Origin: Phyllobates terribilis
Taxonomy: Eukaryota
Assembly (NCBI RefSeq): GCF_046119375.1
Contig: NW_027362762.1
Location: 814,494,001 to 814,558,000 of the forward strand
DNA length: 64,000 bases
Direction: 5' to 3'
Shown here: positions 2,423 to 54,049 of the stretch, one piece after another
Layout: each line of letters starts with the position of its first letter
Position numbering within the stretch: the stretch's first letter is position 1
Notes under the pieces: generated by a model
Seen by the model: the letters and a program-made list of their open reading frames with translations, nothing else
Told to the model about the DNA's origin: nothing
Databases searched by the model: none
Program-made: the position numbers and the translations under genes

Positions 2423-3251
2423 CAGCGCTCCGTAGCCTGAGGAATCACATGACCATCACGTGTCAGTGACGTCACGCAAGGTCCTACTCGTCTTGCCGGC
2501 TCCACCGTATCTGCGCGCCAACGAGGTTATACCGACGGAAGCACATAGCCACCGGCCGGGGCTCTGCTTCCTCCTGCCGCTTTACTTAACAACCCACGAG
2601 GTAAAACAGATATCATCCATATATTCAAGGATAACAGCAGTACCCGCAACGCACTCTTAGGCTTGCATTCCTGCTGACCCCTGCAACCGTCTATATCAAA
2701 GAGGAGGTAAGACTCTCATTGCCATAAGGACTAATATTGATGTCCGCTAGAGGTACTGATCACTTCTTAAAGTAATTATACAATCTACTTATTAGTACCT
2801 ATAAGTACACTCATTGGCTATATACTAGCGTTGGGTATAATATAACCAATCTGGTGGACACCCGTGGTTACTGACAACATATTGGGTCCTTCTCCCGCTA
2901 CTACCACTCATTGGGGAGACCTATGTAGTAACGCATTCATTTTAGTCTAGTTATCACTTTCTATTTCCTTCTAGGATAACTAAGTGCTCTGCTCTACCTC
3001 CAATAAGATCCTTTTTTATCTATAAGCAATATCCCAGGATCACACACAGAACTTCGATACTAGGTATTCTGTGGGTTTTTTCAAAAATCATAAAAAGAAC
3101 TACTGTAAGATTTTTTAACTAATTTTATTGAATATATTTTTAAATCTCTTGCACAATAGGCACCTATATATTCTAGCCACTTGGATATCACTCCCGGCGG
3201 GAATACGCAATATAGGAATACACTTATACAAGGAAGGTAACTATTCCTCTT

Positions 3252-3424
3252 CATCAGCCTTTACAATAAGAACATAAATATTCCCTAACTGATATACCTC
3301 CCCTTTTTTCCCTCCTTTAGGTATCATTGCTAATCTATGGTCCCTCTGATAACCCTGACTGGCTACTATCAATCGGACTTTTTACTTACCCACCTCTTGG
3401 GACACATTCATAATTATTTTTTGA
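3252..3424. repeat. Inverted repeat partner of bases 1-173
   Basis: Its reverse complement matches 1-173 with no mismatch found by eye; the repeat probably continues beyond the left edge of the window. Confidence 0.92.
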
Positions 3425-18714: not shown

Positions 18715-21700
18715 TCAAATCCTCCAACGTGCGGGTAACTGGCCCCTAGTGGCCCTAGTGGACCTACGGAGCTGACTGTCTGGCCCTGAACTACAGGGTG
18801 TAGGAGCTGTTAAGGGTAAACTGGGCAGCGGTCTACGGGCCCTTTGGCTCACTAGGGATATGGCAGGCTCACTGCAAGCAGAGGGTTGATCCTCCTGGTC
18901 TGCTGGTGTGGGGTCTTCTGCCTCCTGGACCGGCTGTTCTTCCAGCTCTACCTGTTGCTCCGTAGGTGCTTGGGATGCTGGTTGGAGGAAGGTGAGTACG
19001 GGTACCACAACTGCACCATTGACTTGAGTCCAAGACCGAGGGAAGTCCCCGAGCACAGTACTAACCATATCTTCCCTTTCCTCTACGGGTCGATGGTCTT
19101 CTTGTTCCTCTTCAGGGTTCCTCAGTTGTTCGGGACACTTTTTCAGGTGGTCCCGGGATACAATGGCTGTGGTTTCCCCTCCGTCTTTACTGATGGTACA
19201 AACCTTCGGGTTCTCGTGGCTTGAGGGCAGTACGGTGTACGGGTCCTTCTCCCACTGGTCGTCCAACTTGTGGAGCCGTCTCTTCCTCTTCAAGACCTGC
19301 TCTCCGGGTACCAGGGGAACAGCGGGAGCATACTGGTTGTAAGTTTTCTCTTGTCTTTCCCTAGCCTGACAGAGACTTCGCTCCACGCTCTCCTGTACTC
19401 TCCGGTACTGCTGCTGCCTCTCTGTGTCCCAGTCTGCTTCTGGTGAAGTGTCCTCGGGTGTCAGGACTCCCATTTCCAGGTCAACAGGTAACTTACCAGG
19501 TCTCACCCTCATTAGGTAAGCCGGGGTACAGTTGGTGGAACCTACCGGGATGTGGTTGTATAGGTCCACCAGATCGGGCAGCTTCTCAGGCCACAGACTG
19601 CGTTCTTCCAGGGGCAACGTTTTCAGAAGATCCATTACCACCTGGTTCATTTTCTCACAAAGTCCATTAGTTTGCGGATGATAGGGTGTCGTCCTTATCT
19701 TCCGGCAGCCATACAGAGTGCAGAACTCTTGGAAGACCTCCGCTTCAAAGGCAGGTCCCTGGTCTGTCAACACTTGGTCCGGGTACCCGTGTGGACGGCA
19801 GAAATGCTGCTGGAAGGCTCTTGCTGCTGTCCGAGCTGTTAAGTCCTTGACGGGGACGACAACCAAGAACCGGGAGTAATGATCCACGATGGTTAACGCG
19901 TAGACGTAGCCACTTCTGCTTGGGGTCAGTTTTACATGATCCAAGGCTACCAGTTCCAACGGTTGCCGGGTGATGATGGACTGCAGGGGAGTCTTCTGGC
20001 TGGCACGGTCCTTCCTTCTCAGGTTGCACGGGCCACAGTCTCTGCACCACTTCTCGATGGTTCCCCTCATGCCTACCCAGTGGAACCGCTCGCGCAGCAG
20101 GAACTCCAGCTTCTTCCACCCGAAGTGTCCAGCTCCGTCGTGGTATGCCTCCATCACCATGGCTGCGTCTCTTCGTGGCACCACTACTTGCCAGAGTAAT
20201 TCATGTGTCCGGGAGTTAACCATTCTGCGGCACAACTTCCCTTTGTAAAGGAACAGTCGACTCTTCTCTGCCCATAGTTGTTTGGCTTCCTCCGGAGCGT
20301 CTGGGTCAAGGCGAGCCTCTGGCCGAGTCAGCATCTCCTTCACCAGTCGGACGGCAGGGTCGCTGTCTTGCGTTTCCGCCCAGTTGTAGTGGGGTAAGGG
20401 GTTCAACGTAGCAGCCTGCTTACTCCTTACCCGGTGGGAGTACTGGATAGTCCCATGACGGTGGAACGCAGGGAGTTCAACTTCTTCCAGTCCCTCCGGA
20501 TCTTCTCCTCCGTCCGGCAGGTTGGGCATCCTGGACAGGGCGTCCGCGTTGGTATTGGAGCGTCCTGCCCGGTATTTGATTGTGAACTCGTAGTTGGACA
20601 GACGGGCCATCCACCTCTGCTCCAGGGCACCGAGTCTTGCCGTGTCCAGGTGTGTCAACGGGTTGTTATCCGTGTACACGGTGAACCGGGAAGAAGCGAG
20701 GTAATGCTTAAAGCGCTCGGTGACTGCCCATACCACGGCCAGGAACTCTAACTTAAATGAGCTGTAATTCTCGGGGTTCCTTTCGGTGGGTCGCAGTTTT
20801 CGGCTTGCGTAGGCGATTACTCGTTCTTTCCCTTGCTGAATCTGGGACAGCACGGCTCCTAGCCCGATGTTACTGGCGTCGGTGTAGAGGATAAAGGGCT
20901 GGCTATAATCCGGGTATGCCAGGATTTCATCCCCCGTGAGGGCCATCTTCAGCTGGCGGAAGGACTCTTCTTCCAGCTCCTCCCATTTGAAGGGCGGCTT
21001 CTGGTTCTTGGCCTTCCAGGACTGGCCTATCAGGAGGTCCTGCATAGGAGCTGCTTTTTTGGTGAAGCCGGGGATGAATCTGCGGTAATAGCCTACCAAC
21101 CCAAGGAACTGCCGCACTTCCTTTACACTGGAGGGACTTGGCCATTCCTTAATTGCGGTGATCTTATCAGGGTCGGGAGCCACTCCATCAGCGCTCACCA
21201 CGTGTCCCAGGTACTGCACCTTTGGCTTCAGGAGGTGACACTTAGAGGGTTTCACCTTCAGGCCGTAACTTGCCAGGGCTTCGAACACTTCCGCCAGATG
21301 TTTCAGGTGGTCCTCATAAGTCTTGGAATATACGATGACATCGTCCAGGTACAACAAGACCGTCTCGAAGTTTTTGTGTCCCAGACAGCACTCCATTAAT
21401 CGTTGGAAGGTTCCTGGTGCGTTACAAAGTCCAAACGGCATACAGGTAAACTCGCTAAGTCCCATCGGGGTGGTGAATGCGGTCTTCTCCCGGTCCGCCT
21501 CCGCTACAGGAACCTGCCAGTACCCGCTAGTGAGATCCAAGGTAGAGAAGAAGTTAGCAGATCTTAAAGCAGCCAAAGACTCCTCTATCCTTGGTAAAGG
21601 GTACGCATCCTTGTGTGTGATACGGTTGATTTTCCGGTAATCTACACACATCCTCATAGTGTTGTCTTTCTTTTTGACTAAAACCAGTGGGGCTGCCCAG

Positions 21701-22851
21701 GGGCTACAGCTATCCCGGATTACCCCAGCCTCCTTCATGTCTCTAAGCATCCCCTTGGCGTGTTGGTAGTGTGCAGGGGGTACGGGTCGATACCTCTCTT
21801 TTATGGGAGGATGATCTCCCGTGGGGATGCGGTGTTCTACCCCCTTGACTCGCCCGAAGTCTAACGGGTGTTTACTAAACACTCTCTCATACTCTTGAAC
21901 CACCCGGTAGACTCCCTGTTTCTGGTGGGAGGGAGTGGAGTCTGTTCCCAAGTGTAGTTGCTGACACCAATCCTCCATTACTTTCTTAGAGCCGTTACCT
22001 TCCTCCGGGTGAGATGGAGGCAAGGGTTCCACAGATTGTATAGCATTTTGGCTAATGGTATATAATTTGGCTAGCGTGGCATACCGGGGCAGGTACACTT
22101 CCCTCTTCCCGATATTGATTATGCGAACGGGCACCCTCCCATGGCGTACATTAACCACCCCCCGTGCTGTCAAGATGATGGGCCTACTGTCTGCGTAAAC
22201 TGGTTCTACCATTGCCTGGTAATCTCTACCCCTCAGACCAATAGCTGCCCGGCACCAAATCATCATTTCACTTTTTGGGGGCATGGCAATAGGAAAAGGG
22301 TCACACATTCTTACGCTACCAATCTCACCGCCGGAGAGTTCCACCTGTTGCCGTCGCATCAGTGCCCGGATCTCTTTCTGGAGCACCCGCTGCTCGCCGG
22401 AACTGGCGTTCTTGGCAACCTGCTGTAGAAGGAAAATCACCTCTGCAAGACAATTTTCAATTACATTAGTTCCTAGAGTTATTTTTGGGTGACTCTCATG
22501 TTTGTCAATATCTACAATGATCAGTCCCTGTGCTGCCAGTTCGACTCTACCGATTTTGATGGTCACTTCTTTAAATCCGATCTGTGGCACGGGCTGGCCA
22601 TTGCTGGCGATGATACTCAAGTCGTCGTCAGGGTAGCGGGTAATATCCGAGTCATTCCAGTATTGCTTAAAGAGCACGTACGGGATGGTGGTGACCTGTG
22701 ACCCGGTGTCCAGTAGGGCACTCATGGGAATGCCATCCAGTACCACAGGCAAGACTGGACGTCCTCCCACATATCTGTCGCGCCAGTTCGATGGGCCTGG
22801 TGATCTTTTTCCTGGGGGTTGGCCCTCTACCCCAGGTTGTGCCCGTTTAAA
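18715..22851 (-). CDS. pol: Gypsy Pol (protease, RT, RNase H, integrase), entered by -1 frameshift
   Basis: Uninterrupted 1351-aa ORF (18715-22770) with LLDTGS, YLDD, TDAS...KLE, HFGW/CGPC, LDH, TDQG and E motifs. The frame stays open upstream to the slippery site at 22845-22851. Confidence 0.97.
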   Translation of the reverse strand, partial: FKRAQPGVEGQPPGKRSPGPSNWRDRYVGGRPVLPVVLDGIPMSALLDTGSQVTTIPYVLFKQYWNDSDITRYPDDDLSIIASNGQPVPQIGFKEVTIKIGRVELAAQGLIIVDIDKHESHPKITLGTNVIENCLAEVIFLLQQVAKNASSGEQRVLQKEIRALMRRQQVELSGGEIGSVRMCDPFPIAMPPKSEMMIWCRAAIGLRGRDYQAMVEPVYADSRPIILTARGVVNVRHGRVPVRIINIGKREVYLPRYATLAKLYTISQNAIQSVEPLPPSHPEEGNGSKKVMEDWCQQLHLGTDSTPSHQKQGVYRVVQEYERVFSKHPLDFGRVKGVEHRIPTGDHPPIKERYRPVPPAHYQHAKGMLRDMKEAGVIRDSCSPWAAPLVLVKKKDNTMRMCVDYRKINRITHKDAYPLPRIEESLAALRSANFFSTLDLTSGYWQVPVAEADREKTAFTTPMGLSEFTCMPFGLCNAPGTFQRLMECCLGHKNFETVLLYLDDVIVYSKTYEDHLKHLAEVFEALASYGLKVKPSKCHLLKPKVQYLGHVVSADGVAPDPDKITAIKEWPSPSSVKEVRQFLGLVGYYRRFIPGFTKKAAPMQDLLIGQSWKAKNQKPPFKWEELEEESFRQLKMALTGDEILAYPDYSQPFILYTDASNIGLGAVLSQIQQGKERVIAYASRKLRPTERNPENYSSFKLEFLAVVWAVTERFKHYLASSRFTVYTDNNPLTHLDTARLGALEQRWMARLSNYEFTIKYRAGRSNTNADALSRMPNLPDGGEDPEGLEEVELPAFHRHGTIQYSHRVRSKQAATLNPLPHYNWAETQDSDPAVRLVKEMLTRPEARLDPDAPEEAKQLWAEKSRLFLYKGKLCRRMVNSRTHELLWQVVVPRRDAAMVMEAYHDGAGHFGWKKLEFLLRERFHWVGMRGTIEKWCRDCGPCNLRRKDRASQKTPLQSIITRQPLELVALDHVKLTPSRSGYVYALTIVDHYSRFLVVVPVKDLTARTAARAFQQHFCRPHGYPDQVLTDQGPAFEAEVFQEFCTLYGCRKIRTTPYHPQTNGLCEKMNQVVMDLLKTLPLEERSLWPEKLPDLVDLYNHIPVGSTNCTPAYLMRVRPGKLPVDLEMGVLTPEDTSPEADWDTERQQQYRRVQESVERSLCQARERQEKTYNQYAPAVPLVPGEQVLKRKRRLHKLDDQWEKDPYTVLPSSHENPKVCTISKDGGETTAIVSRDHLKKCPEQLRNPEEEQEDHRPVEEREDMVSTVLGDFPRSWTQVNGAVVVPVLTFLQPASQAPTEQQVELEEQPVQEAEDPTPADQEDQPSACSEPAISLVSQRARRPLPSLPLTAPTPCSSGPDSQLRRSTRATRGQLPARWRI

Positions 22852-23807
22852 GAACAGTACCTTGCCATATGTCCGGGTTGATTGCAGCGGCGGCAGATGG
22901 GTCGTCCGTCCTCGCTGTATCGGTCACTGGGTCTTCCTCTGGCCGGTGGGGTCCTCCTTGGTCGACGCCACGGGATGTCCTCCGGTCCGGATGCCAGCTG
23001 GATCTTCCCTGGAGTGGAAACCTGTAAAGACTGCACAGTTCGGGTTAGCGCAGCAACGCTCTTAGCTAGCTCTTGGACCTGATGGTGTAGGTCTGGAGCC
23101 GGGTCATTGTCCAAAGCCTGCGCATCAGCTCCCACAGGCCCTGCCGACAAGGGCGCCGCCTCCTGGTGGTAAGTGGTAGTGGGGCGCCTGTGGGTCACAA
23201 CGCCACCTGGTGCCGGTTCTCGGAGCACCCGGATGGCTCTGTCCTTGAACTGTGCAAATCCCAGATGGGGATCCTGCAAGGCCATTGCCCGCAACTGGGT
23301 TCGGTGGGTATTACAATATAGTCCCTCTATAAACTGTTCGGTCAACAGCCTGTCCTCGTTTCCCACTCCATCAGGGTCGGTCTGCTTAATGGCCCTCAGG
23401 GCCTCTTGTAGGTTTAGTGCATAGTCCCTTATACTCTCATGCGCTCGCTGCTTGCACCCGTAGAATCTAAGCTTAATCTCGGCTGAGGTACGGGTATCAA
23501 AGGTGTCCTTCAGCCGGGTTAGTATCCCTGCGACAGTCTTCCTCCCAGGTGGCCAGGATTTTACTTCCCTTTTGGCTGCCCCGGTTAGTTGGGCCACCAG
23601 GATGCTCACTTTTTGCTCTTCTGTGAGGGGGTACACCTGGAAGAGGCTATCCAGCTTTTCTCTAAAGTCATGCAGGGTATGTGACTCCCCTGAGTACTGG
23701 GGTAGCCAAGCTGCTCCCGGGATATAGGGCATGGTGAAGGGCATAACTGCAGCAGCGGTAGCGCTGGCGGGGGTTGAGGCAGTGAAGCTCTCCTCCGTAT
23801 CCGACAT
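22827..23807 (-). CDS. gag: Gypsy Gag (326 aa, PNMA-like capsid region, CCHC zinc knuckle)
   Basis: Likely ATG at 23807 (MSDTEES), CRRCNQPGHMARYC knuckle, TAG at 22827-22829. The ORF track's start at 24104 is upstream open frame in the 5' UTR. Confidence 0.92.
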   Translation of the reverse strand: MSDTEESFTASTPASATAAAVMPFTMPYIPGAAWLPQYSGESHTLHDFREKLDSLFQVYPLTEEQKVSILVAQLTGAAKREVKSWPPGRKTVAGILTRLKDTFDTRTSAEIKLRFYGCKQRAHESIRDYALNLQEALRAIKQTDPDGVGNEDRLLTEQFIEGLYCNTHRTQLRAMALQDPHLGFAQFKDRAIRVLREPAPGGVVTHRRPTTTYHQEAAPLSAGPVGADAQALDNDPAPDLHHQVQELAKSVAALTRTVQSLQVSTPGKIQLASGPEDIPWRRPRRTPPARGRPSDRYSEDGRPICRRCNQPGHMARYCSLNGHNLG

Positions 23808-24216
23808 CTTCCTCCCCCCTAGTGGACCGTGGCCTTGCGATGATCCTCTTCCGTAGGCCGCGGCTCCGCAGTGGATGGTTGAGGACCTTCCGTCGCGCTC
23901 CTGTGACGTCAGCGTCTGCTGGGCTCCTTCCAGGACCTTACGCAACGTCCGGACGTGAGGCGGGGCTTCAGTTCTCGCGCGCTTTCGGAGTCCACGCCCC
24001 TCTTCTTCCCGCGCGGCGTCCTCAAGATGACGTCCAATGGTGGGAAAACTCCACGGATGGCGGGAAGAAGGCAGAAGATGGCGCCGGATGGCGGGAAACT
24101 TCACCGATGGCGGGAAGAAGGCTGAAGATGGCGCCGGATGGCGGGAATCTTCACCACAGGTAAGTTTGAAAAGTCTCTTTTTCAGGCACGCAGTACCCGG
24201 TGGTTGCGGGCACGAG

Positions 24217-27650: not shown

Positions 27651-28797
27651 TGTGTGCTTCTGTCAGTATTGTGTATTTAATGTCCGTTTTGGGTATTTGT
27701 CTGTATTGTGTAGTTGTTGTGTGTATTTTGCATTTATGTGCATCAGTGATGTTGACAGCTATGCCATCGGCAATGCATTTTGCCATCTGGGTCACCCCAG
27801 GCGGATAGGTTTTAACTGAGGTGTCAGAATAAGCATACTGCTCAGCACCAGCAGGACGTTGCGATGGGGCGGTGTGTATTGACAACATACAACACTGATT
27901 CAGTGAGGCTCCTTCATGGGTGCCACATTACTGCGCGGAAGAAAGGCCTGGCAATCTACTTCCATATTATGCAAAGAAAACGATATTGATGAGCTCTGTA
28001 GAACCCCATCCCCACCACTGATTGGCAGCTTTCTGCCTATGCACAGTGTACACACAAACCTGCCAATCTGTGGTGTGGGCGGGTTATTCATACCTCAGTA
28101 TTGAGAGAAATGGTAGATCTGCAGCAGATAAAACTATGATTTTATCAAAACTACAGTGACACATTGCTGGAATCAGAGTCTCTGTCTCTACATCATGCTA
28201 TTCTCAGATGGAGTACCAAAAACCTGGTGACAGATTCCCTGTAAGAACAGAGGGATTTTTAATCATTTTGTTTACTGCTCACTATCAAGGTTACCAGTCA
28301 CCCCTGCAATCTAGTAGCTGTGGTGTTTCATGGGCTAGGAGAACAGCACTTACAAGCTCTTTTCTAAAGAGCTGCTCTGAAACTGGCAGGATCTCTGCAG
28401 TGCACGGTCAGCTCCTGATCCCGGGCAGATTTAGTGCCACTGCGTTCTTACAAGGCTGCCTCATATAGTAGCATCGGGAGCGCACCGTTTGTAACGATGC
28501 CACTGGTCTTAATTGTCAATCAATTAGGAGTGCATCACCTCTGACAAAAAGGAAGCCAGGACAACCCCTTTAAGGCACCAGAAGTTGTTGACAGAACCAG
28601 ACGCTTTTGTCAGGGTCAGCTGACCGTCTGATGTGTTTGGGGGCGTCCCAACTCTTCCCCGAAATCATCAGTTTGAATTCATATGATACTTTTGTTCTCC
28701 CGCTAGATAGGACGCTGCCAGAGCAGTCTGTTACTGGCTTACTCCACTCTCCTCATAAAGAACATTTGTACTCTCAGCTGAAAGGAATGTACATGTA

Positions 28798-30390
28798 CAG
28801 AGGGGAAAATAAGTCTTTGATGCACTGCTGACTTTGCAAGTTTTCCCACCTACAAAGAATGGAGAGGTCTGTAATTTTTATCGTAGGTACACTGCAACTG
28901 TGAGAGACAAAATCTAAAAAAAAATCGAGAAAATCACATTATATGATTTTTACATAATTAATTTGCATTTTATTGCATGAAATAAGTATTTGATACAATA
29001 GAAAAACGGAACTTAATATTTGGTACAGAAACCTTTGTTTGCAATTACAGAGGGTAAATGTTTCCTGTAGTTCTTGACCAGGTTTGCACGCACTGCAGCA
29101 GGGATTTTGGCCCACTCCTCCATACAGATCTCCTCCAGATCTTTCATGTTTTGGGGCTGTCGCTGGGCAACATTGAGTTTCAGCTCCCTCCAAAGATTTT
29201 CTATTGGGTTCAGGTCTGGGGACTGGCCAGGCCACTCCAGGACCTTGAAATGTTTCTTACAGAGCCACTCCTTAGTTGCCCTGGCTGTGTGTTTCGGGTC
29301 ATTATCATGCTGGAAGACCCAGCCATGACCCATCTTCAATGCTCTTACTGAGGGAAGAAGCTTGTTGGCCAAAATCTCGAGATACATGAACCAATCCATC
29401 CTCCCTTCAATACAGTGCAGTCATCCTGTCCCCTTTTGCAGAAAAGCACCCCAAAGTATGATGTTTCCCCCACCATGCTTCATGGTTGGGATGATGTTTT
29501 TAGGGTTGTACTCATCCTTCTTCTTCCTCCAAACACGGCGAGTGGAATTGATACCAAAAAGTTATATTTTGGTCTCATCTGACCACATGACCTTCTCCCA
29601 TGCCTCCTCTGGATCATCCAGATGGTCATTGTTGAACTTCAAATGGGCCTGGACATGTGCTGGCGTGAGCAGGGGGCCTTTACGTGCCCTGCAAGATGTT
29701 AATCTATGACGGCGTAGTGTATTACTAAAAGTAATGTTGAGACTGTGGTCCCAGCTCTCTTCAGGTCATTGACCAGGTTCTCTCATGTAGTTCTGGGCTG
29801 ATTCCAGACCTTTCTCAGAATCACACTTACCCCAGAAGACGAGATCTTGCATGGAGCCCCAGAACAAGGAACATGGACAGTCATCTTATGTTTCTTCCAT
29901 TTTCTAATAACTATTCAACATGCACAACAAGCTGCTAGCCTATTGTCCTGTAGCATATCCCAGCCTTGTGCAGGTCTACAATTTTGTCCCTGGTGTCTTT
30001 AGACAGCTCTTTGGTCTTGGCCATAGTGGAGCGGTTGGAGTGTGATTGATTGAGTGTGTGGACAGGTGTCTTTTATACAGAAAATGAGTTCAAACAAGTG
30101 CAATTAATACAGGTAATCAGAGCAGAGTAGAAGGGCTTCTTAGAGAAAAACTAACAGGTCTATGAGAGGCAGTATTCTTGCTGGTTGGTATGTGGTCAAA
30201 TACTTATTTCATGCAATAAAAAGCATTTTAATTATTTAAAAATCATACAATGTAATTTTCTGGTTTTTCTTTTTAGATTCTGTCTCACAGTTGAAGTGTA
30301 CCTATGATAAAAATTACAGACCTCTCCATTCTTTGTAGGTGGGAAACCTTCCAAAATCAGCAGTGTATCAAATAAGTATTTTCCCCACTG
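28798..30390 (-). mobile_element. Tc1/mariner transposon (IR/DR type), degenerate
   Basis: ~200-bp TIRs CAGAGGGGAAAATAAGT / ACTTATTTTCCCCACTG-like, TA on the left and TG on the right. Transposase from ATG ~30024 (MAKTKELS) to 29013, with FQHDNDPKH and [11 protein letters not shown]; frameshifted. Confidence 0.92.
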
Positions 30391-30896
30391 TGTATGGGGA
30401 AGTTAGGAGAGAGCAGTAAGGTAAGTGAATATTAGTAGATGTGGTGCTGCTGTCAGACATCTAGGCCCAGGCCATAAAGAGGCTCATACTCACCTGTCAG
30501 CTCTCGCTTGCTAATAATCATCTCATGCGAGAAGCATGAAGACATTATTAATGTGTAAAATGTGGAAACGTCAAGACCCACGATGGGAAGTAGAAGACCA
30601 AGGGATCTTATTTGCCTGAATAGGGCCCATATACTAGTGGCTATAATCACCTAATATATAGTATCAAAATGAAATAAAAAAAATGTAATAAAATATAAGA
30701 AAGGGGGTGACAAACGCGCTGAGTATGACAGAAAGGCAGATAATATCTTCATAAGAATTTATTCAAAGAATAAGGGCTATGCGTTTCAACATTGGACAGA
30801 TTTCTTTCTCAGGCCAAGCACATCCCTCCAAGGTGAGCGGACTGCCACATGCCCTTTCTTGTCAGCTCTCACCATTTTATTCATTTCTGAACTATG

Positions 30897-40125: not shown

Positions 40126-41890
40126 CTGGAAACATTAGAAATTCCATACGTCATCAATGTTCAATTATCATTCATAAAGAACTGAAGATTAGGAAAATTG
40201 CATAGTGCATAATGGTAATAGCTACAGGCATGCATTCAGAAAACAATTGTTATGTCGGCTGTTTGCATAGAAAACAATCAAATCGCAGAAGAAGAAAAGA
40301 GATTTAACTGGTCACAATGGGTAATTGTCCTGACTTATCTACATGGGTTATCACACATGAAGCCCACTGTGTTATCTTTCCCATATCTATATTCTGCTTT
40401 GATCATAGCTCCTCGCAGCCTAACAAGGTTGTCCCATGAAGATAAACTAATTATATTAAGAAGCTGCCCCAGAGATCACCTGCTCAGCATGCACAAGGAG
40501 AAAAAAATGTTATTGATGCAACCCATTTAATGATAACAGCTTGGAGGACTGAAAGAGGACCTTTAACCAGTCTGAGCATGTTAAACCAATCGCCTGATGG
40601 AATAGTGGCTGCAGAACTGAGTAAAACATATTTTTTTAGTTCTCATCTCTCTGGCAGAGATATTAGCTTGTAAAGCTTAGATTTTAACTTTTTGCTAAGA
40701 CCAAGTGGCCGTTAGCAGAGATTCGTCTCTGGAGGTCTGTACTTTTTTCCCCTGCATGACGTTGACTGATTATAAGCAGGAGGAATAGTAGACCTGGGTT
40801 TCTCTGTATGAGACATGTAATGACACACAGCCCTGCTCTCCTCACTGATTTCACTGCTGGCATCTACAGTGTAGAGTAGAGTAGAGCTATGTGTCATTAC
40901 AAACACCTCTGCAGCTCTCCTTGCGCAGCACTTTCAGCTGTGCTCTACTCCCCCTCCTTCCACACTGACAGTGCTGAGGGAGGAGAGCTGCGGAGTGTAT
41001 TCATAAGGACACACAGCTCTGCTCTACTCCCACTTGGAATCCCCTATAGGCACTGGCAGTAAGATCAGTGAGGAAAGCAGGGTTGTGTTTCATTACATGT
41101 CTCACACAGAGAAAGCTAGGTTTGACATTCTCTGGAGGTGTGGTTTTTTTCCTCTCGCCCCCAGAGACAAATCTTTGTTAACACCTCCTTCGTCTTAGTG
41201 AAAATTAAAATCTAAACTTTACAAGCTAATGTCTCTGCAACGGAGATGAGAAATGAAAAAAATAAAACCTAAGTTTAATTCTTGGCTAGATAAGCTGCCA
41301 CCATAGTCTGGCAGTGGCTCTCTCATAAACAACACAGGAGGACATGGCAGAGTGAGTGCTCCTGTGTATCGAGGAGAGAACTGTTGGTCCTATGCATTCG
41401 GTGAGTGCATTAAACGAATAAAATTGAACAGATGCATTTTGAGTCTTGATATAAATGTGTCCAGTGATGATCCTTCAAATAGCTGGGACCTAAGCTCAGC
41501 CGAGCGCTCCTGTGTTCTCTTTGAGAGAGCCACCGCCGACATGTCTGACAGCGGCTTATCTCCAGGAGGACAAAAGGATCGTCAGTCCGATATCTGACAA
41601 ACTGAATCCTTAACTCCCCCGACAATCATTTGTCCAGGGTCCTCATACACATTAGACTACTGGTCGGAGCCATTGATATCAGCCGATATCTAATGTGTTA
41701 AGGGGGGCTTTAAAAAGGCTTTAGTGCAAAATGACAGATAAGTGGAAACCAAACATAGGTCACAGTTAGATGCCTAGCTCAGCTCACAGACCAAAGCAGA
41801 GATCATTTGGTGATTTTCTGTTTTAATGGTGTATTTCATCACAGGCACTGGATGTCTGTCTGTGGTCCAAGGCTTTGCAGACGCCCCTTA

Positions 41891-43727: not shown

Positions 43728-44269
43728 TTAGACAGATGCATTGGCAGGACGACCAAAGCAGAATGATTGTAGGACAGAATAAATGTATTGTTAGATTATG
43801 TCGCCTTGTCAATTTACAAGAGCACTACACTTTAAATTGATCATCTGATGTGACAAGATGATACATTCAAAATTACACTGTCCTTGGTCCATAAACTGGA
43901 GCGCTGACCAAATTCCAGAAAAGATGAACTCCAGCACACATTGAGGCTACGACTACTCAGCAACTTTTGGCCGCGACACTTGCCGTGTGACCAAGGTCCG
44001 CTAGGTGCGAATGCACTGTGACCTCGAGGATTCAGGGATTGTGACAGGCAAGTCGCAAGAAGTCCAACCATATTGGTTCTTTTGTGACTGGCCTGTCACA
44101 GTACCCTCAGGGTCACAATGTGGGTACTACAGATCCACCCACTATAATTATGATGGAGCTGCAGTGTTCTGGTTGCATCTGAGAACTTTCAGCCAATCAG
44201 ATACTGATGGCTCATCCTGAGGATAGACCATCAATAGAAAAAGTAGTGGAAAAACCTTTTAAGCATTAA

Positions 44270-44637
44270 AGGGGTATTCCCATCTCCAAGATGCTATCCC
44301 AATATGTAGTGGGTGTAATAATAATATTAGCAAATACCTCCAATTAGAAATGCAGTATAGTATTTTTGATTCGCTATGCCACTTATGTGGCACTCATGTG
44401 CAGGCAATACAGAACCTTAGGTGTCCATAGTTACGACCACTTGCAGCTAGCTAACTGTGACTTTATCAGTGGACGTAACCATGGATACCCAAGGTCCTGC
44501 AATGCCTGCACATGAGGAAAGAGACATAGCCAATTAAAAAAAGCTGTACAACATATCTTATTGGAGGTATTTGCTAATATTATTATTATTACACCTACTA
44601 CATATTGGGATAAGATCTTGGAGATGGGAATACCCCT
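44270..44637. mobile_element. TTAA-flanked fold-back MITE (Kolobok/T2-like)
   Basis: AGGGGTATTCCCATCTCCAAGAT...ATCTTGGAGATGGGAATACCCCT with long TIRs; TTAA at 44266-44269 and 44638-44641. Confidence 0.88.
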
Positions 44638-45173
44638 TTAACCTCATTCTTTCTTAGAATTGGTTGTAGTTGCAGCTTATATCTCAATAGGTCAGAGGAT
44701 AACTTATTAAATGACTTTAAACAAAATTACTGCTTCCAGAAACATGTGCAGCTTGAATCAGAGCTTGGCAGCAGCCAGGTATTTTATCCTCTGAAACGCT
44801 GCTGTGTTTCAGAGAAAATATAGTTTGAAGAGCTGACCGGGGACTATAAGGAGAGACCTGACTAGTCCAGTGATGTCCCCAGTCAGCGTCTACCTACCAC
44901 ACTTTAGTTGATTGACAAGTCTCTCCTTGTGTATACATAGCCAGAGACCTGTCAATCAACTGGAGCAGGGTGGGGAATAAGTCGGCTGGGGACGTCACTG
45001 GACTAGCTGTGTATCTCCTGTTAAAACTACTGTATGTGTTCTCTAAAACACCCCAGCGCTTCAGAGTAAAATATACCTGACTGTAATCCCACACCCAGGC
45101 TCTGATTTCTGCTGTCCATGGTTCGGGCAGCATGAATCTAATGACCGGTTCCTTTTAAACACTCCTACAATTA

Positions 45174-46580: not shown

Positions 46581-47221
46581 ATATACACAAGTACAAACGC
46601 ACACTTATTCACTGTTGTGACAAAATGAGCTGCGACACCCTGAAAATGGCCACAAATGCCTTTGTGTAAAAAAGGGACCAGGAAAAGGAGACCAGAGTTA
46701 AGGCTACGTTTACACAAAGAGTATTTGGTGAGTTTTTGATGTTGCAGATTTTCTGTAGCATTTCTGCACGTATTAGATAAAGTAGATTACTTATGCTTTT
46801 TTCATTGCGTTTTTAGTGCATTTTTTTCAAGCATTTTTATTGTGTTTTTGATGCTTTTTTGCCTCTTTTTGCCATCATGTTTCATATTAAGTTGCTCTGT
46901 TATTGATACATCCTGGTATTTGGCTTTTACAAAACTCTATTGATACAGTCATGTGTGGATTACATGCATTTTTAGCGCGTTTCGGCAGCACATGTGCACA
47001 GTGAAAACACGCAGTGACAAACACTCGCCAAATCAAATACTCATCATGAGAACTTAACCTAACAAAGTAAGCATCAGAAGGGAATCGGTGATTGTGAACA
47101 CCATGTCTTCATTTTTTTTTTATCAGTTTGAGCCCTTTTAAAAATAATTTTTATCCCACGAATAACCGTTCTAAGTAGTAAAATCTATTTACAAAGTTAC
47201 TCAACTTTTTACGCAGTTTCA

Positions 47222-47581
<360 letters not shown>

Positions 47582-47694
47582 CTATTAACAACACACAGAC
47601 ATATTAATGATTAAAGACCATTCACAATAGAGAATGAGACACTGGTATCACACAGTATACACAGGCTGGAGGGTAACTTTACTAATCTAGTAAT

Positions 47695-48208
47695 TGTCAC
47701 AAAGTGACTAGGGACTGTGGGCACCTACCCAATCCCTAGAACTAGGGGCACCCTCGTCTATCCCTGTCCCCCGCACTCCTGAAGGTGGAGACGCCAGGGT
47801 CACATACCTTGCTATGCTCCTATATTACCCGTTAGCTGTTCCCTCCCCCATCCAGGAAGGTGTGTGGCCAAAGTGTTAAACAGGGAAGGTACAGGAAGGT
47901 GAAACCACACAACAATCTCCTGAACAACTCTCCAAACACCTACTCCAAACACGAACTTCACCTCCAACTCCTTATGCCAATGGTGAGCATATATAGCAGA
48001 GGGGAGGGGCCAACACTGAACAGCTGAAACAATCCAAGTTGGAGAGCTCCAGGAGCTTCAACTGAACTGATTAACTCTTGCACTGCCAGCAAGGAAAAAA
48101 AACTTGCACTGTTTAATAGGATGGTGAAGCAGTTTTAATCAGTTCAGGAGTAAGTGAAACCAGACTCTGTGGTCTTCCTGCCCGTCTCTGTCACGGTATC
48201 CCGTGACA
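47695..48208. mobile_element. Solo LTR (514 bp)
   Basis: TGTCAC...GTGACA termini; 5-bp TSD GTAAT at 47690-47694 and 48209-48213. Confidence 0.85.
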
Positions 48209-49537
48209 GTAATTTGGTGTATTTATTATCCTACCAGTGCTTCATTTCTAATCTACCACTATCTCATGGTTTTGTGAGCTTTATATAAGGAAAAATACAC
48301 AGAAATGAATAGGAAAAAAAACATTCTTTCTTTGCTGTTTTCTTTTACACAATAATCTACAGTCCCCATACACATTAGACAAAAGTCGTCTGAACCTGCC
48401 GGGATTGGCCGACCACCTAATGTGTATGGGGACACCTGACTGCTCCTTGTCAGATTACTTCTGGGAATGTAAGGATCTGGTGGGTGAATCCTTTTGTTCG
48501 GCAGGGAGATGATTTTTCTAGCGGCTCTCTCATATAGAACACAGTCCCGTTCGACCGGCAGCTATCTAATGTGTCAGCTTTAGTTTTTAAAGGCACCGCT
48601 CTAGTGCTGCTTCTTTGGTGGTTATTGCCAGTCTCTAGATATTTTGCTGCAATGATCATGAGCCATACATCCATGTGACCGCTGCAGCCAATGACTGGCA
48701 TCAGCAGTCTTGTGCTATACATACAGAGACCTCCACTGAGGCCAGTGATTGGATGCAGTGATCATGAGCTTGTAAAAAGAAACTTGTGGTAGCAAAAATT
48801 CTGGATAACCCCCTTTAAGCTTGTCTCCCTTCCATAAGGAAGCCAATCTTTTCTCCTCAAGAAATAATATCGATACCCCAAAGCTGGAGCCCCTATGGCC
48901 TCTAGAATGGGAGTCCCTTCCATGCCAAGCATGTGGCATGGAGGAAAAACGTGTCTGTTACCAACAAGGTGGTTGATGGGAGAATAGATGCGCTGAGAAA
49001 TTAATCTTTCCATACTATTTTATTTAGGGGTAAAAGTAGGGGGCTGACCACTAGGGCCCTAGCTCAGGGTAGAGAACTCTTCTTTTTAAACCAACTAAAA
49101 TTTATTGTCGTGATATAAAAGATCAGATATATTACGGATACAGCAAATTCACAAGTTTTGATGTCCAATAAATCCTTACCAGGAACAAATCTAATATATT
49201 TAGTACAAAGTAGAAACCGCATTAAAGGTAATGTAGCACAGATATAGAGAACTGGAATAGGATATCACAAAATATATCTTAGTGGGTTCTGCCCACAAAT
49301 AGAAAATCAGACCAAATATACTTAGATAAACTATAGTCACTGCTGCTTGTCTATTTTTGTTTAGTGAGATAAGATGATAAAGGGCAGGTTCGAAGACCAG
49401 ATAGAAGAAAGTGTGGCCCAGGAGCCACCCCTCCCCCCATAAGGGCAGCCTCTCCCATCTCTTTATCTGGGGTAGAGAACTTTATTTTTTGGACAACTTC
49501 ACAATCAGCCGCTATTCAGGTCACAATGTAACCCATG

Positions 49538-49667
49538 TTACCCATGTAAACACTTAATAATGCGGACCACCACCAAACACCCCGACCCCTTGAGAAAGCC
49601 TGTGAGTGTGAAACGCGCGTCGGGGTGTTCGGTGGTGGTCTGCATTATTAGGTGTTTACATGGGTAA
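49538..49667 (+). other. 49-bp hairpin enclosing a hammerhead-like core
   Basis: Arms 49538-49586 and 49619-49667 pair with 2 G-U pairs and 1 A-C mismatch. The loop contains TTGAGAA-AG...GAAACGCGC followed by GTC. Confidence 0.8.
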
Positions 49668-50514
49668 GTCTCCCCTGATACTTTGTCTGTTCCCTTAACT
49701 GCATTATTATGCTGAAGGGACATGTTAGCGGCACATTGTTACATGATAGTTTAACAGTGATGTCCCTTCTCGTTCCATCATTACATGGGGGTATTTGTTT
49801 GCATGCTAGAAGCTTGTGGCTCTCTTTAAACTACACTGTGGGCCACAATCCTCTACCTTTCTGTAGGCAACAACGATTTGCATGCCATATTTTGTGGTTT
49901 GTTAATTTATAGTAAGGGTTATAACCTTTTTTTACATCTCTTTAGGAGACAGATAGGTTCACTTTATTATATTTTGATATGATATTCTAGTCTTACCCTG
50001 GGCCATTCCACCTGTCTTTACTTGAATCCTGTTCTTTTTTCATCTTTATGCGGGTGGTTTAATATCGCACAATGCAATGTATTTTATACTATATCAATAA
50101 AAGTTTATTGTTTTTATATGGTCTGCTAGTGGTTTTTTTGGATGCTCAGTATCCAAATATAGACTGGTATTGATGGCCTATCCATGAGGACTCGTACACA
50201 TTAGAGAAAAGTTGGCAGAACTTGCCGATTTGGGCTGGATTGGCCGACTAATCTAAATGGGAGCCACCCAACTGTGCCCGACGGGGGGTCATGAGGTTCA
50301 GGTGGTTGGAATTCAATCAACTGATATTTTTCTTCTATGGGCAAAGGATTGCTCTCGCCATAGAGACCACAAGCCCGGCTGAGCGTCCCTGTGTATGGGG
50401 GAGTCAGGGGAGAGGATCAGAGCTGATCTGCAGGACCTGGGAGTGGCCACTAATCAAGACACAGAGCTGTGCTGTTCTCACTATACGGATTACATCTGGT
50501 AACAGCGGATCGGT

Positions 50515-51045
50515 GGGGGTGCAGGGAATCATAGGTAGGGGGAGAAGAGTGTCATAGGTGGGGGAGCAGGGCATCATAGGTAGGGGAGCAGGGTGTCACA
50601 GGTAGAAAGTGCACGGCGTTGGAGGTAGGGGGTGCATGGCGTCATAGGTAGGGGGTGCAGGGCGTCATAGGCAGGGGGTGCAGGGCGTCATAGGTAAGGG
50701 GTGCAGGGCGTCATAGGCAGGGGGTGCATGACGTCATAGGTAGGGGGCGCAGGGTGTCATAGGTAGGGGGTGCATGGTGTCATAGGTAGGGGGTGCAGGG
50801 TGTCACAGGTAGAGGGTGCAGGGCGTCATAGGTGGGGGAGCAGGGCGTCATAGGTGGCAGTGTAGGGCATCATAGGTGGGGGAGTAGGGCGTTCCAGGTG
50901 GGGGAGCAGGGTGTCGCAGGTGGAGGAACAGGGTGTCGTAGGTGGAGGTGCAGGGCGTCGTAGGTGCGGGTGTAGGGCGTCGTAGGTGGAGGTGCAGGAC
51001 ATCGTAGGTGGGGGTGTAGGGCGTCGTAGGTGGAGGTGCAGGTCG
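50515..51045. repeat. G-rich ~23-bp minisatellite (~22 degenerate copies)
   Basis: Consensus GTCATAGGTAGGGGGTGCAGGGC. Confidence 0.88.
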
Positions 51046-51880
51046 TCAGACCTCCACTGATATACTGATCGCGTTTTCTACCGATAGGTCATCATCAATG
51101 TCATTGAAATAGAAAACCTCTTTAAACTGTTTTAAAAAATTGTGGACGCATCAGATTAATGTCGGCTAGAACGGCAGATTTCTAGTGTGTATGGGGGTCT
51201 CCCGGCTGTTCCCTGATGTCAGGGGAGAGAAGGATTAAGCAGTTGGATTTGTCCGTGAGATAAGCCGCCAGTAGATGACTCTGGCAGCCGCTCTTGTCCC
51301 CTCTCTGTATTGAGAACACATTCTGGCTCTGCGGGGGCAGAGGTTATAGAGGTACAGGGGGTACACTGGGCTGAGCTGGACCCTGAGGCCTCTCTGCACC
51401 TTTCTATATGTTCCCATTGCAGGAGTCCTAGCACAGATTTGGGGTCACCTCTCTGTATGTACAATAACAATAGAAACAAGTGACAAGGTTTGATTGGGAC
51501 GACGTTCACCACATCCGGAGTGTCCCAAAGAGATCGCCATGAGTCACTAGATCTCCTCCAATCAGAAATGCCCCTCTGCTGGTTTAACCCTCCATCTCCA
51601 CCCTGCTGTCACCATACTGCCACCCCCATCTTCATCCATGTCACTTATCTAGTGACTCCATTGTTCTGCTATGTGGCCTCTGGATTGTGTCCCCCATCAG
51701 GAGCAGGGGCCCAATTATAACCGATGCTCCCAGCAATTCTACCTCACCCTGTGCCCCTTATATACACTCACAGACATGAGCTACACAGTGTTCCAAGTTC
51801 TTACATATTTCCAGATACTTTTTTCTCAAGAGGTTGTGCAGCAGCAAAACCTTTTCTAGCCCAAACAGCCGGCAGGATAC

Positions 51881-52270
51881 CTGGTGGAGAGATCCCGGGT
51901 GGAGAGATCCCTGGTGGAGAGATCCCTGGTGGAGAGATCCCGGGTGCAGGTCTGTAGTGATGAGGATTCCCTGCGCCGATCTCAGCCGCTCATCTCCTGC
52001 CTACAACACAAGGCGGTTACCATGGAAGCAGGAAGGACGCGTCTCCAGCACAACACGGACGCGGCCTCCCCTCCCCCGTCTGCAGTGATCATGCACTGCG
52101 CACACCCTGATTGCTGTCAGTGACTGGAGTCCGCCTGCCCGGCGTGTTATATGTGGCATTGTCTGTGCGGGGTTATCACGGGATCTGGAGATAGTCATGT
52201 AAACAAGCAGCATATGGCGAGGGGCAGAGCACAGCATGGCTGCACCGTGTGAGACCCCCGGGGGACCCGT
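51881..52270 (-). promoter_or_regulatory. Candidate tekt1 promoter and non-coding exon 1
   Basis: CpG-enriched. X-box-like GTTACCATGGAAGC (52016-52029), forkhead motif GTAAACA (52199-52205), minus-strand donor-like CAG|GTATCC at 51881/51880, and four 15-bp repeats at 51884-51943. Confidence 0.5.
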
Positions 52271-54049
52271 CACACTCATCACCTAGGGATAGAGGAACAT
52301 AGGGGGACGAATTAAAAAGTGTGCAACATACTGGGAAATATTCGAGGTCTCTAAATAATGCACACTGGCCATCCGGTGTAACTTCTGGGGTTCCTAGGGT
52401 GCAGTGGGAAAAATTTACCTACCCACGCCCCCTTTACAGCCCCTCTGTGCCCCATTTCTTGGCCCATTTTTATGAGTTAGGACATCAGGGTTCTTCATCT
52501 CTTCTGGGTTGTCTCACCCCATTTTTTAAAGCCTTAACTTTTTGGGAGAGTTGACAATGGTACATGGCGTCCCCATAGCTGCCAGAAAAGGAGCTCATTT
52601 AGACATCATGCACATGGGCGTACAACAGCTGGAGAAATCCATGGGCCCGTACTGTACCTCCAAGTGCCTCAGATTTTATACAAGGGACACAGAGGTTTTC
52701 TCTTATGAATTCAGGGCCAACCAGTCCAAAATGATTAAACCTAGCTGTGCCACTAATTACAAGTTTTAGGATAGGTTCATACAAGTTAAAGGGGTTCTGC
52801 ATTGATGATGTCACTCGCCTGTGGAAGTAAACAGCACGAGACAACCCCTTTAATGTTCACCATGACCCTGAAGGCTCACTTACATGAGCGTATCACACGG
52901 CCGAGTTCTAGCTGATGTTTTATTGGATTGCACTCGGACCAATGTTATACTATGGTTATACATCTACGGACTCACACAATGGAGAAGATGGAGAAATTAA
53001 TTTCTCCATCTTCTCACCTGTGCTGCAATTCTTGCATGCAAAAGAGAATTGGATCACAGTAAGATCACATTCGGCTCAAACACTGATCAGAGTTTGAGCC
53101 AAGATTCATTTACATAATTGATCCGATTCTCTCGCACGAGAGAATTATCGCTAGTGTGACCCCGGCTTAAAACTGAGGATCACATCAATGCTATATAGCA
53201 AATACATGAAAAAGATGAATATTTCCTGTTCTGTTCTACACCTGTTGCCAGTCTGATAATGATAAATTCTTAAAGATCCCACCTTATTAGAGCTCAATAA
53301 CGTTCCTTATGCTCTCAATTTGTAGTGGGAAATGAGACGACTTGCGCTACACAGCATCCACTCTGAACAATTAGTGCTGCAGTGTAAAGCATGTAGGAGA
53401 GACAAGGTAGCTTCTGCCTGGGATGAGACAATTGCTAATTGCAATCACTGATTCTAGATGTTCCTCTGTTGTCATAACTACATATACACACTAATATAAA
53501 CTGCAATAGTGGACCCCAAACGATAGCTGCAACATAAAACAACAAAGACAGATAGTTCTCACCATCCCTCGCACCAGCGCCAGCTCCCCGCAGATGGTCT
53601 CTGTGTTTTGGATGTGGGTGCACAGTGACATCGACAGATCACATCACCGCTGCAACCAGTGGTGTAACTTGAAACTCGTGGGCCCCAATCCAAAAGATCC
53701 TACTGGACCCCCAATTATATTGCATGTCTTTAATAGTAATTGTCTTTTCATATGGGACTAAGGTACCTTTTGGGCCCACTTGCAATTGCAACCCCTGCAC
53801 TTATTATTGTTACACCCCTGACTGCAGCCAATCACTAAGCTCCATGAGTCTGCCGATGTAAGTAGTACAAGTGGTGATCTGCTGCAACGATTATTTGAGC
53901 TGTTGATGTAACATTGGTGTCCACTTCTTTTAAAAGTGGAAAAGCCCTTTAATTAGTTTTCACTACAGAGGTTGAGTCGTGGCTGCCTGGTTAATCCTGC
54001 TCTTTGGGTATCATGCCTATGGTAGAGCCACTTGGCATATGTGGTGCCC

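What the first reader, a model, noticed from the sequence alone, without database searches (positions are those of the whole stretch)
49538..49667. A hammerhead-like core caged in a 49-bp hairpin: two mutually exclusive folds
Fold A is the ribozyme: stem I ACCCC/GGGGT (49585-49589 with 49622-49626), core U3-U-G-A-G-A8-A9 with the compensatory U3:A8 swap of the conserved C3:G8 pair, an extra A, a weak 2-bp stem II, GAAA, palindromic CGCGCG stem III and GUC at 49619-49621. Fold B is the long hairpin, in which GAC (49584-49586) pairs with that GUC and locks the cleavage site inside a 49-bp stem. Two of the three arm differences are G-U compatible. This could be a self-silenced or switchable ribozyme, a dsRNA/siRNA source, or a fold-back product of PLE reverse transcription. 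It sits in an AT-rich, ORF-less element (~48900-50140) with a repeated GGGTAGAGAACT, suggestive of a non-autonomous PLE or retrozyme-like family. I cannot confirm that it is undescribed.
Basis: partly seen in the sequence, partly recalled or inferred. Interest (0 to 1): 0.75.

Follow-up and report, generated by a model that had tools for sequence, protein, structure and literature searches.

The report
Penelope-type hammerhead relic in hairpin
This is a lone, worn copy of the small hammerhead ribozyme motif carried by frog Penelope-like jumping genes, flanked by an inverted copy of its own downstream sequence; it is a known kind of element, probably a by-product of retrotransposition and not a working RNA switch.

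Summary
Arms 49538-49586 and 49619-49667 form a 49-position hairpin (48 pairs, one A-C) around a 32-nt loop.

That layout is the published "minimal hammerhead" of Penelope-like elements (PLEs; Cervera and De la Pena 2014). It includes the U3-A8 core covariant, the unpaired base after A9, the short helix I and the palindromic loop 3.

Laying contigs of two DNA runs shows the arms are single-copy. The roughly 41-nt core recurs in at least 50 different contexts per run, with length changes confined to helix II. Contigs from two probable RNA runs also hold it, but at other loci.

This copy is weak. Helix II is 2 bp, 11.1 is U, and there is no partner for dimer cleavage in 64 kb. The ribozyme fold is 14-21 kcal/mol worse than the hairpin.

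The three arm differences are all transitions, two at CpG, which fits neutral decay. A relative shares the 3' arm, so the 5' arm is the derived inverted duplicate. The likeliest origin is a fold-back or head-to-head product of PLE integration.

This is a new member of a known kind and is probably inert. The scan's earlier notes report the same U3-A8 motif and hammerhead fold-backs elsewhere in this genome.

The parts
49538..49586 (+). 5' arm of the hairpin. It is the derived, inverted duplicate of the sequence downstream of the hammerhead and is single-copy in the genome.
   Evidence: inverted repeat I1; depth equals the single-copy baseline outside the core, and alignments of other copies start at 49585/49586.
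49619..49667 (+). 3' arm. This is the native sequence downstream of the cleavage site and is shared in part with a relative seen in the RNA-run contigs.
   Evidence: records 7 and 30 cover 49606-49649, and the loose end of one (record 7, run X10) behind 49649 continues with the same ACATGGGTA.
49585..49589 (+). Helix I, 5' strand (ACCCC).
   Evidence: It pairs with 49622-49626.
49590..49596 (+). Core box U3-U4-G5-A6-G7-A8-A9 (U3-A8 covariant of C3-G8).
   Evidence: The variant is described in PMC4209133.
49597..49597 (+). Unpaired A between A9 and 10.1.
   Evidence: This is a conserved trait of PLE minimal hammerheads. The same A is present in the window's canonical PLE hammerhead at 2381.
49598..49609 (+). 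Degenerate helix II plus loop. Only G49598-U49609 and C49599-G49608 can pair.
   Evidence: Length changes among other copies cluster at 49599-49609 (table 4).
49610..49612 (+). G12-A13-A14.
49613..49620 (+). Helix III and loop 3: A15.1, palindromic CGCGCG, U16.1.
   Evidence: Only this site and the PLE hammerhead at 2399 have a GC palindrome in this position in the window.
49621..49621 (+). C17. The predicted cleavage is on its 3' side.
   Evidence: Inferred from the hammerhead numbering. Cleavage was not tested.
49622..49626 (+). Helix I, 3' strand (GGGGU).
   Evidence: Alignments of other copies end at 49624-49629.
49579..49584 (+). ACCCCG, the competing register. In the hairpin it pairs with 49621-49626. 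In the ribozyme fold it would be a 6-nt bulge.

Best explanation
Segment 49585-49626 is a solitary, partly decayed copy of the type I minimal hammerhead motif that Penelope-like retroelements carry, in its U3-A8 core version. The 3' arm is the sequence that naturally follows the motif. The 5' arm is a 46-49-nt inverted duplicate of that sequence, joined just upstream of helix I. The duplicate was most likely made when the element was copied into the genome, by one of two routes. Either the first cDNA strand folded back and primed on itself, or two cDNAs primed on the two target strands were joined head to head. The result is a DNA palindrome with the ribozyme core as its loop. Since then the arms have drifted by CpG-type transitions. 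Any RNA from this locus would fold as the long hairpin and would not cleave. Shown here: the anatomy, the multi-copy family, the single-copy arms, the energetics and the pattern of arm differences. Inferred: the origin at retrotransposition and the lack of function.
For: The anatomy matches the published min-HHR: helix I 4-5 bp, the U3-A8 covariation, an unpaired base between 9 and 10.1, and palindromic 15.2-16.2/loop 3. These motifs occur mostly as solo copies, with about 9,000 in Xenopus tropicalis. A PLE in the same window (RT with FIDD, GIY-YIG ORF) carries the same layout with a canonical core at 2365-2419. One search shows the arms and flanks at the single-copy baseline (about 10 and 15), while the core reaches a summed depth of 750-1050 per bin. 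At least 53 (X4) and 50 (X6) contigs start matching at 49585/6 with unlike flanks (agreement 0.37-0.52). Insertions and deletions are listed only at 49599-49609. Insertions of GG after 49599 and C after 49606, seen at similar depth, would together give a 5-bp helix II. A relative shares 49606-49649 and beyond, so the 3' arm is native. The arm differences are three transitions, two at CpG. The hairpin scores -85 to -90 kcal/mol against -69 to -76 for any fold with helix I. The literature says PLE insertions often carry an adjacent inverted 5'-truncated copy, and that a PLE protein cleaves and extends both target strands from the same RT start site. The PLE at 1-3424 shows such head-to-head arms, 1-173 and 3252-3424.
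Against: No PLE coding sequence lies near the hairpin, and no target-site duplication was found. I could not read individual family copies, so covariation in helices I and II is untested and the family consensus is only inferred from depth tables. One contig joins 49629 to 49990, so the element may run on to about 50262. That would fit self-priming but not a shared 3' end at 49667. G10.1-C11.1, called highly conserved in the 2014 paper, is G-U here. Rfam hammerhead models do not score the site, although they also miss the canonical PLE hammerhead used as a control.
Confidence: 0.65

Rival explanations
1. The inverted duplicate arose after insertion, by a DNA-level event such as a replication template switch or fold-back repair that had nothing to do with reverse transcription. 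The hammerhead relic simply happened to lie at the axis.
For: No target-site duplication or PLE terminus can be shown. The window holds many other inverted repeats. A 2-nt microhomology (AC/GT) at the inner junction fits either route.
Against: The axis lies within a few bases of the hammerhead centre, and the inner end of the duplicate lies 0-3 nt from the predicted cleavage site. Earlier notes of this scan (untested) report many hammerhead-at-apex fold-backs in the same genome, which suggests a process tied to the element.
Confidence: 0.2
2. The locus encodes a caged or switchable ribozyme. The long helix holds the hammerhead inactive until a helicase, a protein or a trans RNA opens the inner 8-9 bp.
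For: Both registers exist, and the ribozyme fold would keep a 41-bp closing stem with a 6-nt bulge, which formally resembles the helix I internal loop of type I hammerheads.
Against: The energy gap is 14-21 kcal/mol and the pair probability is about 0. Helix II is 2 bp with a G-U at 10.1-11.1. These minimal motifs need a dimer partner, and none is present in the window. The arms are unique to this locus and are decaying at CpG sites. No RNA-run contig covers the arms or the unique flanks.
Confidence: 0.05
3. The hairpin is a source of small RNAs (hairpin siRNA or a miRNA-like precursor), made from either strand.
For: A 49-bp near-perfect stem would be a Dicer substrate if transcribed. Generic miRNA hairpin models give weak matches on the minus strand (mir-4863, 42.7 bits).
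Against: That score is far below the family threshold of 100 bits. No transcription of the arms is seen in the two probable RNA runs, although these are small and are not small-RNA libraries. The locus is single and there is no sign of conservation.
Confidence: 0.07
4. It is a miniature inverted-repeat DNA transposon whose loop resembles a hammerhead only by chance.
For: The window is rich in MITE-like fold-backs. The arms could be read as TA-flanked.
Against: The arms are single-copy while the loop is the repeated part, which is the reverse of a MITE. There is no target-site duplication. The descriptor with a palindromic loop 3 gave 0 hits in 200 shuffles.
Confidence: 0.03

Closest known systems
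Minimal type I hammerhead ribozymes of Penelope-like elements, U3-A8 core variant (Cervera and De la Pena 2014, PMC4209133)
   Same: Core boxes, the U3-A8 covariation, the unpaired base between A9 and 10.1, a 5-bp helix I, palindromic positions 15.2-16.2 and loop 3, GUC at the cleavage site, many solo copies per genome, and variable helix II.
   Different: Helix II here is 2 bp instead of 6-8 bp, and 11.1 is U instead of C. No PLE ORF or pseudo-LTR is recognisable beside it. Helix I continues into a 41-bp stem.
Head-to-head PLE insertions: an inverted 5'-truncated copy next to the main copy (Craig et al. 2021, PMC8557442); cleavage and extension of both target strands by the Anolis PLE protein (PMC11167929)
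   Same: Two copies in opposite orientation share their distal ends and have unequal inner ends. A full-size example lies in the same window (arms 1-173 and 3252-3424).
   Different: This one is a miniature (about 82 nt plus 49 nt) without coding sequence. It is not shown that 49538 and 49667 are true element termini.
Animal non-LTR retrozymes and amphibian satellite-2 units (bioRxiv 10.64898/2026.07.22.740005)
   Same: A hammerhead of PLE ancestry in a frog genome.
   Different: Retrozymes are tandem direct units, each with a hammerhead. Here there is one motif and no tandem repeat.
Viroid hammerhead with an extra A after A9 (De la Pena and Flores 2001, as cited in PMC4209133)
   Same: An additional unpaired base at the 5' end of helix II.
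   Different: It is a plant viroid ribozyme with a canonical C3-G8 core and a stable helix II. The resemblance is of one feature only.
Self-primed (snap-back) cDNA and L1 5' inversions by twin priming (from general knowledge, not checked here)
   Same: Inverted sequence at the 5' end of a retrotransposed copy, generated during reverse transcription.
   Different: L1 twin priming gives an inversion and not a duplication. No evidence links these mechanisms to PLEs beyond the papers cited above.

Membership tests
PLE minimal hammerhead (min-HHR) | Catalytic boxes: (C/U)3-U-G-A-N-(G/A)8-A9, G12-A13-A14, A15.1-U16.1, H17, with positions 3 and 8 able to pair | tested here: met
   UUGAGAA at 49590-96, GAA at 49610-12, A49613/U49620 and C49621. 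The U3-A8 form is documented.
PLE minimal hammerhead (min-HHR) | Type I topology with a short helix I (4-5 bp) | tested here: met
   ACCCC/GGGGU, 5 bp.
PLE minimal hammerhead (min-HHR) | Unpaired nucleotide between A9 and 10.1 | tested here: met
   A49597. The same feature is at 2381 in the window's canonical PLE hammerhead.
PLE minimal hammerhead (min-HHR) | G10.1-C11.1 pair and a helix II of about 6-8 bp | tested here: not met
   G49598-U49609 wobble plus one C-G pair only. Other copies carry insertions that would lengthen it (inference). This copy is best read as a decayed member.
PLE minimal hammerhead (min-HHR) | Palindromic 15.2-16.2 / loop 3, allowing a dimer helix III | tested here: met
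   CGCGCG at 49614-19. The cofold of two cores pairs through it.
PLE minimal hammerhead (min-HHR) | Belongs to a multi-copy consensus family with compensatory changes in the helices | tested here: inconclusive
   Multi-copy status and helix II length variation are shown. Individual sequences could not be read, so covariation was not counted.
PLE minimal hammerhead (min-HHR) | Location in a PLE pseudo-LTR | tested here: not met
   No PLE coding similarity in 47600-53000. The published motifs are mostly solo as well.
PLE minimal hammerhead (min-HHR) | Self-cleavage, as a dimer | not testable with these tools
   Needs in vitro transcription.
Rfam hammerhead families | Score at or above the gathering threshold | tested here: not met
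   No hammerhead match even at E up to 10. The control PLE hammerhead at 2365-2419 is missed too, so this test is uninformative for minimal motifs.
Non-LTR retrozyme | Tandem direct units, each with a hammerhead | tested here: not met
   Single motif, and no direct repeat of the region.
MITE | Multi-copy terminal inverted repeats flanked by a target-site duplication | tested here: not met
   The arms are single-copy and there is no duplication.
miRNA precursor families of Rfam | Score at or above the gathering threshold | tested here: not met
   mir-4863 scores 42.7 bits against a threshold of 100, and MIR9666 scores 26.4 against 88.

The most novel reading that the evidence does not exclude
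The inner end of the inverted arm lies 0-3 nt from the predicted cleavage site: the duplicate starts between G49619 and G49622, and cleavage would fall after C49621. The fold-back could therefore be a run-off cDNA of a Penelope RNA that had been cut by its own hammerhead. If so, it is a genomic footprint of in vivo cleavage by a U3-A8 minimal hammerhead, for which published in vivo evidence is lacking (one search reports no reads ending at the site in Anolis). If the many hammerhead fold-backs noted in this genome share that junction, they would make the question testable from sequence alone.
Probability: 0.12. Interest if true: 0.55.

Novelty: new member of a known kind. Interest (0 to 1): 0.2.

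Why it matters
On its own this locus matters little. It adds one decayed copy to a ribozyme family counted in the thousands in amphibian genomes, and its core variant was published in 2014.

It has two modest uses. First, it shows that Rfam's hammerhead models miss PLE minimal hammerheads entirely, even a textbook one beside a PLE ORF. An Rfam blank therefore cannot be used to dismiss such candidates in this scan.

Second, if hammerhead-at-apex fold-backs are as common in this genome as the scan's notes suggest, the positions of their junctions could show how PLE cDNAs are finished. They could also show whether the ribozyme cuts in vivo.

Tried and rejected
- **Rfam.** Gathering mode on the whole window gave nothing. 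E-value mode on 1.5 kb and on 62 nt gave no hammerhead, only weak generic miRNA hairpins. The control at 2340-2435 showed that the models also miss a canonical PLE minimal hammerhead, so I dropped Rfam as a test.
- **Other copies in the window.** Searches for the arm and for both halves of the core, with up to 3 mismatches, found only the locus itself. Self-BLAST of 48000-51000 found nothing related.
- **Other copies outside the window.** A metagenome scan for the motif gave 0 hits. An exact look-up of the PLE GIY-YIG ORF, meant to fetch more frog DNA, found nothing on record. The supplement of the 2014 paper is not held, and Lunse et al. 2016 is not held. I therefore could not read family members one by one or count covariation.
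- **Extension of the hairpin and target-site duplication.** The best local alignment of the flanks scored 26, within the null range (mean 21, maximum 33). No direct repeat of 6 nt or more lies within 80 nt on each side.
- **PLE coding remnant near the hairpin.** tblastx against the window's PLE gave nothing better than E = 0.24.
- **My first reading.** I started with a MITE or foldback transposon at about 70% and a hammerhead below 5%. One search overturned this: the loop is the repeated part, not the arms.
- **Not run.** The large protein searches, because no protein question was open.

Full report
**Observation.**
The window is from a frog genome, according to notes of this scan seen. I did not identify the species myself. 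Arms 49538-49586 and 49619-49667 are 49 nt each, 94% complementary and 32 nt apart. As RNA the region folds at -92.6 kcal/mol with z = -11.3. Every coordinate given for the hammerhead-like parts is correct.

**Is the core more than chance?**
I wrote a descriptor for minimal type I hammerheads. It requires a pairing 3-8 core box, GAAA, U-H, helix I of at least 4 bp, and helix II of at least 2 bp with 0 or 1 unpaired base after A9.
- Dinucleotide shuffles of the window gave 0.155 hits per 64 kb on both strands.
- With a palindromic loop 3 added as a requirement, 0 of 200 shuffles gave a hit, and the real window gave exactly this site.
- A scan for GAAA, then a palindrome, then U-H found GC-rich palindromes at only two places: this site and position 2399.

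**What the other site is.**
Positions 1-3424 hold a Penelope-like element (PLE).
- It has RT pieces with the FIDD motif and an ORF at 1791-2288 with a GIY-YIG match at the Pfam threshold.
- About 75 nt after that ORF lies a textbook minimal hammerhead at 2365-2419. It consists of a CUGAGGA box, an unpaired A, a 6-bp helix II, GAAA, a CGCG palindrome, UC, and a helix I with a small internal loop.
- The finding has the same order of parts, the same G at position 7, the same unpaired A and the same GAAAC...GUC signature. It differs by U3-A8 in place of C3-G8 and by a stunted helix II.
- Rfam finds no hammerhead at either site, even when only 62 or 96 nt are searched at E up to 10. The Rfam blank therefore says nothing here.

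**The family.**
I laid Logan contigs of two DNA runs from different samples and two probable RNA runs on 48900-50300 at 80% likeness.
- The arms and most of the flanks sit at the single-copy baseline, about 10 in X4 and 15 in X6. An independent sample (X6) carries the whole hairpin region (49418-50194) unchanged; the only difference from the window is at 49914.
- The two bins that hold the core reach a summed depth of 750-1050. The tool warns that depth is not copy number.
- At least 53 contigs in X4 and 50 in X6 begin to match at 49585 or 49586. They stop at 49624-49629 and continue into unlike sequence (agreement 0.37-0.61). The repeated unit is therefore the roughly 41-nt block bounded by the two helix I strands.
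- Among the rows the tool listed, insertions and deletions within the hairpin fall only at 49599-49609, the helix II segment.
- Two insertions of similar depth are GG after 49599 and C after 49606. Together they would turn the local 2-bp helix II into a 5-bp one. This is my inference, because I could not confirm that the same contigs carry both.
- No substitution within the core reached the listed share. I read this as the local letters being the commonest ones among copies at least 80% alike, with the caveat that 50 rows were not shown.
- Contigs of the two probable RNA runs also hold the core, one at depth 367. None covers the arms or the unique flanks, so the family is probably expressed somewhere but this locus shows no sign of it.

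**Comparison with what is published.**
Cervera and De la Pena (2014, PMC4209133) defined minimal hammerheads in PLE pseudo-LTRs.
- Their motifs are type I, with helix I of 4-5 bp and helix II of 6-8 bp.
- They have an unpaired base at the 5' end of helix II and a conserved G10.1-C11.1 pair.
- Positions 15.2-16.2 and loop 3 are palindromic, which lets two copies form a dimer helix III.
- In vitro activity is low.
- The motifs are mostly solo, with about 9,000 in Xenopus tropicalis.
- The paper explicitly reports a U3-A8 covariant of the core, with about 1,300 hits in Schistosoma mansoni.

The copy here fails one of them: helix II is 2 bp and 11.1 is U. A follow-up note of this scan (s1-220973) says a PLE lineage of this frog conserves U3-A8. 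I checked only the literature claim, not that locus.

**The two folds.**
They are not alternatives over the whole hairpin. The ribozyme fold keeps the outer 41 bp, bulges ACCCCG (49579-84) and pairs GGGG 49622-25 with the second CCCC run. The hairpin pairs GGGG with the first run and pairs GAC with GUC.
- The hairpin evaluates at -85.4 kcal/mol (MFE -90.1). The best fold forced to contain helix I reaches -76.2, and the full hammerhead secondary structure reaches -69 to -72.
- The ensemble probability of each helix I pair is about 0.
- The 42-nt core on its own is no more stable than its shuffles (z = -0.13).
- No second copy exists in the window to form a dimer.

I see no basis for a switch.

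**Origin of the arms.**
- All three arm differences are transitions, and two of them are CpG to TpG/CpA changes (GCGG against GCAG, CCGAAC against CCAAAC). That is the signature of neutral decay of methylated DNA. The two-of-three G-U compatibility follows automatically from transitions.
- A relative in the RNA-run contigs matches 49606-49649. Its loose end continues with the same ACATGGGTA as the local 3' arm, while its sequence upstream of the core is unlike the local 5' arm. So the 3' arm is native and the 5' arm is the derived inverted duplicate.
- The inner junction has a 2-nt microhomology (AC/GU).
- PLE insertions are known to carry an inverted 5'-truncated copy next to the main copy (PMC8557442). 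A purified PLE protein cleaves and extends both target strands from the same RT start site, roughly 90 nt beyond the hammerhead cut (PMC11167929). The PLE at 1-3424 shows such head-to-head arms, 1-173 and 3252-3424, at 100% identity.
- I therefore favour a by-product of reverse transcription, either self-priming of the first cDNA strand or two opposed cDNAs. One contig joins 49629 to 49990, which hints that the element may run on to about 50262 and favours self-priming.
- A later DNA-level duplication cannot be excluded. No target-site duplication and no extension of the inverted repeat were found.

**Surroundings.**
The hairpin lies about 2.1 kb upstream of a tektin first coding exon on the minus strand and is on the opposite strand. 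The supposed element at 48900-50140 is a mosaic. It is single-copy to 49087, a moderately repeated piece at 49088-49416, single-copy at 49417-49584, then the core, single-copy at 49627-49980, and repeated again at 49981-50262. The 12-mer that occurs twice is weak evidence.

**Earlier notes of this scan.**
The same motif class (U3-A8 cores) and hammerheads at the apex of fold-backs have been noted many times on other DNA of this genome. These are untested leads. They are the reason I propose the junction survey as the next step.

**Verdict.**
This is a new, decayed member of a known ribozyme class, in a known type of PLE-derived inverted arrangement, and it is probably inert. Limits of this work: individual family sequences could not be read, covariation was not counted, cleavage and small RNAs are untested, and the RNA status of runs X9 and X10 is a guess by the tool.

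Noticed in passing
window 1-3424: A Penelope-like element. It has RT pieces with FIDD (ORFs 53-562 and 852-1655) and a GIY-YIG ORF at 1791-2288. A canonical C3-G8 minimal hammerhead lies at 2365-2419. Head-to-head inverted arms 1-173 and 3252-3424 are 100% identical; the left arm is cut by the window start.
   Followed up: partly
window 2340-2435 and 49575-49636: Rfam 15 hammerhead models miss PLE minimal hammerheads completely, even on a 96-nt search at E up to 10. An Rfam blank should not be used to reject such candidates.
   Followed up: yes
window 18715-24104, minus strand: An LTR-retrotransposon-like gag ORF (PNMA/zf-CCHC, 22827-24104) and pol ORF (protease, RVT_1, RNase H, integrase; 18715-22770).
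   Followed up: partly
window 10191 to about 13500: A 48-bp tandem satellite with about 64 or more nearly perfect copies. It produces long spurious ORFs on both strands.
   Followed up: no
window 47219-47581, minus strand: An ORF holding a tektin N-terminus (Pfam Tektin, E = 1.5e-09), probably the first coding exon of a tektin gene that runs toward lower coordinates.
   Followed up: partly
window 50509-51048: A G-rich tandem repeat with about 22-23-nt subunits and a higher-order period of about 136 nt (75-80% identity between copies).
   Followed up: no
window 50191-50250: A 60-nt piece of a moderately repeated segment (49981-50262). It is present in contigs of both probable RNA runs (depth 23-60, 11 differences). 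Its identity is unknown.
   Followed up: no
window 49530-49547: A 9-nt tandem near-duplication (AACCCATGT then TACCCATGT) that straddles the outer edge of the 5' arm. It has no counterpart at the 3' edge and is unexplained.
   Followed up: no
window 44266-44641, 40631-41261, 28792-30396: Several nested or long fold-backs of MITE-like appearance. One has 49-nt arms 26 nt apart at 44393-44516. None has a hammerhead core.
   Followed up: no
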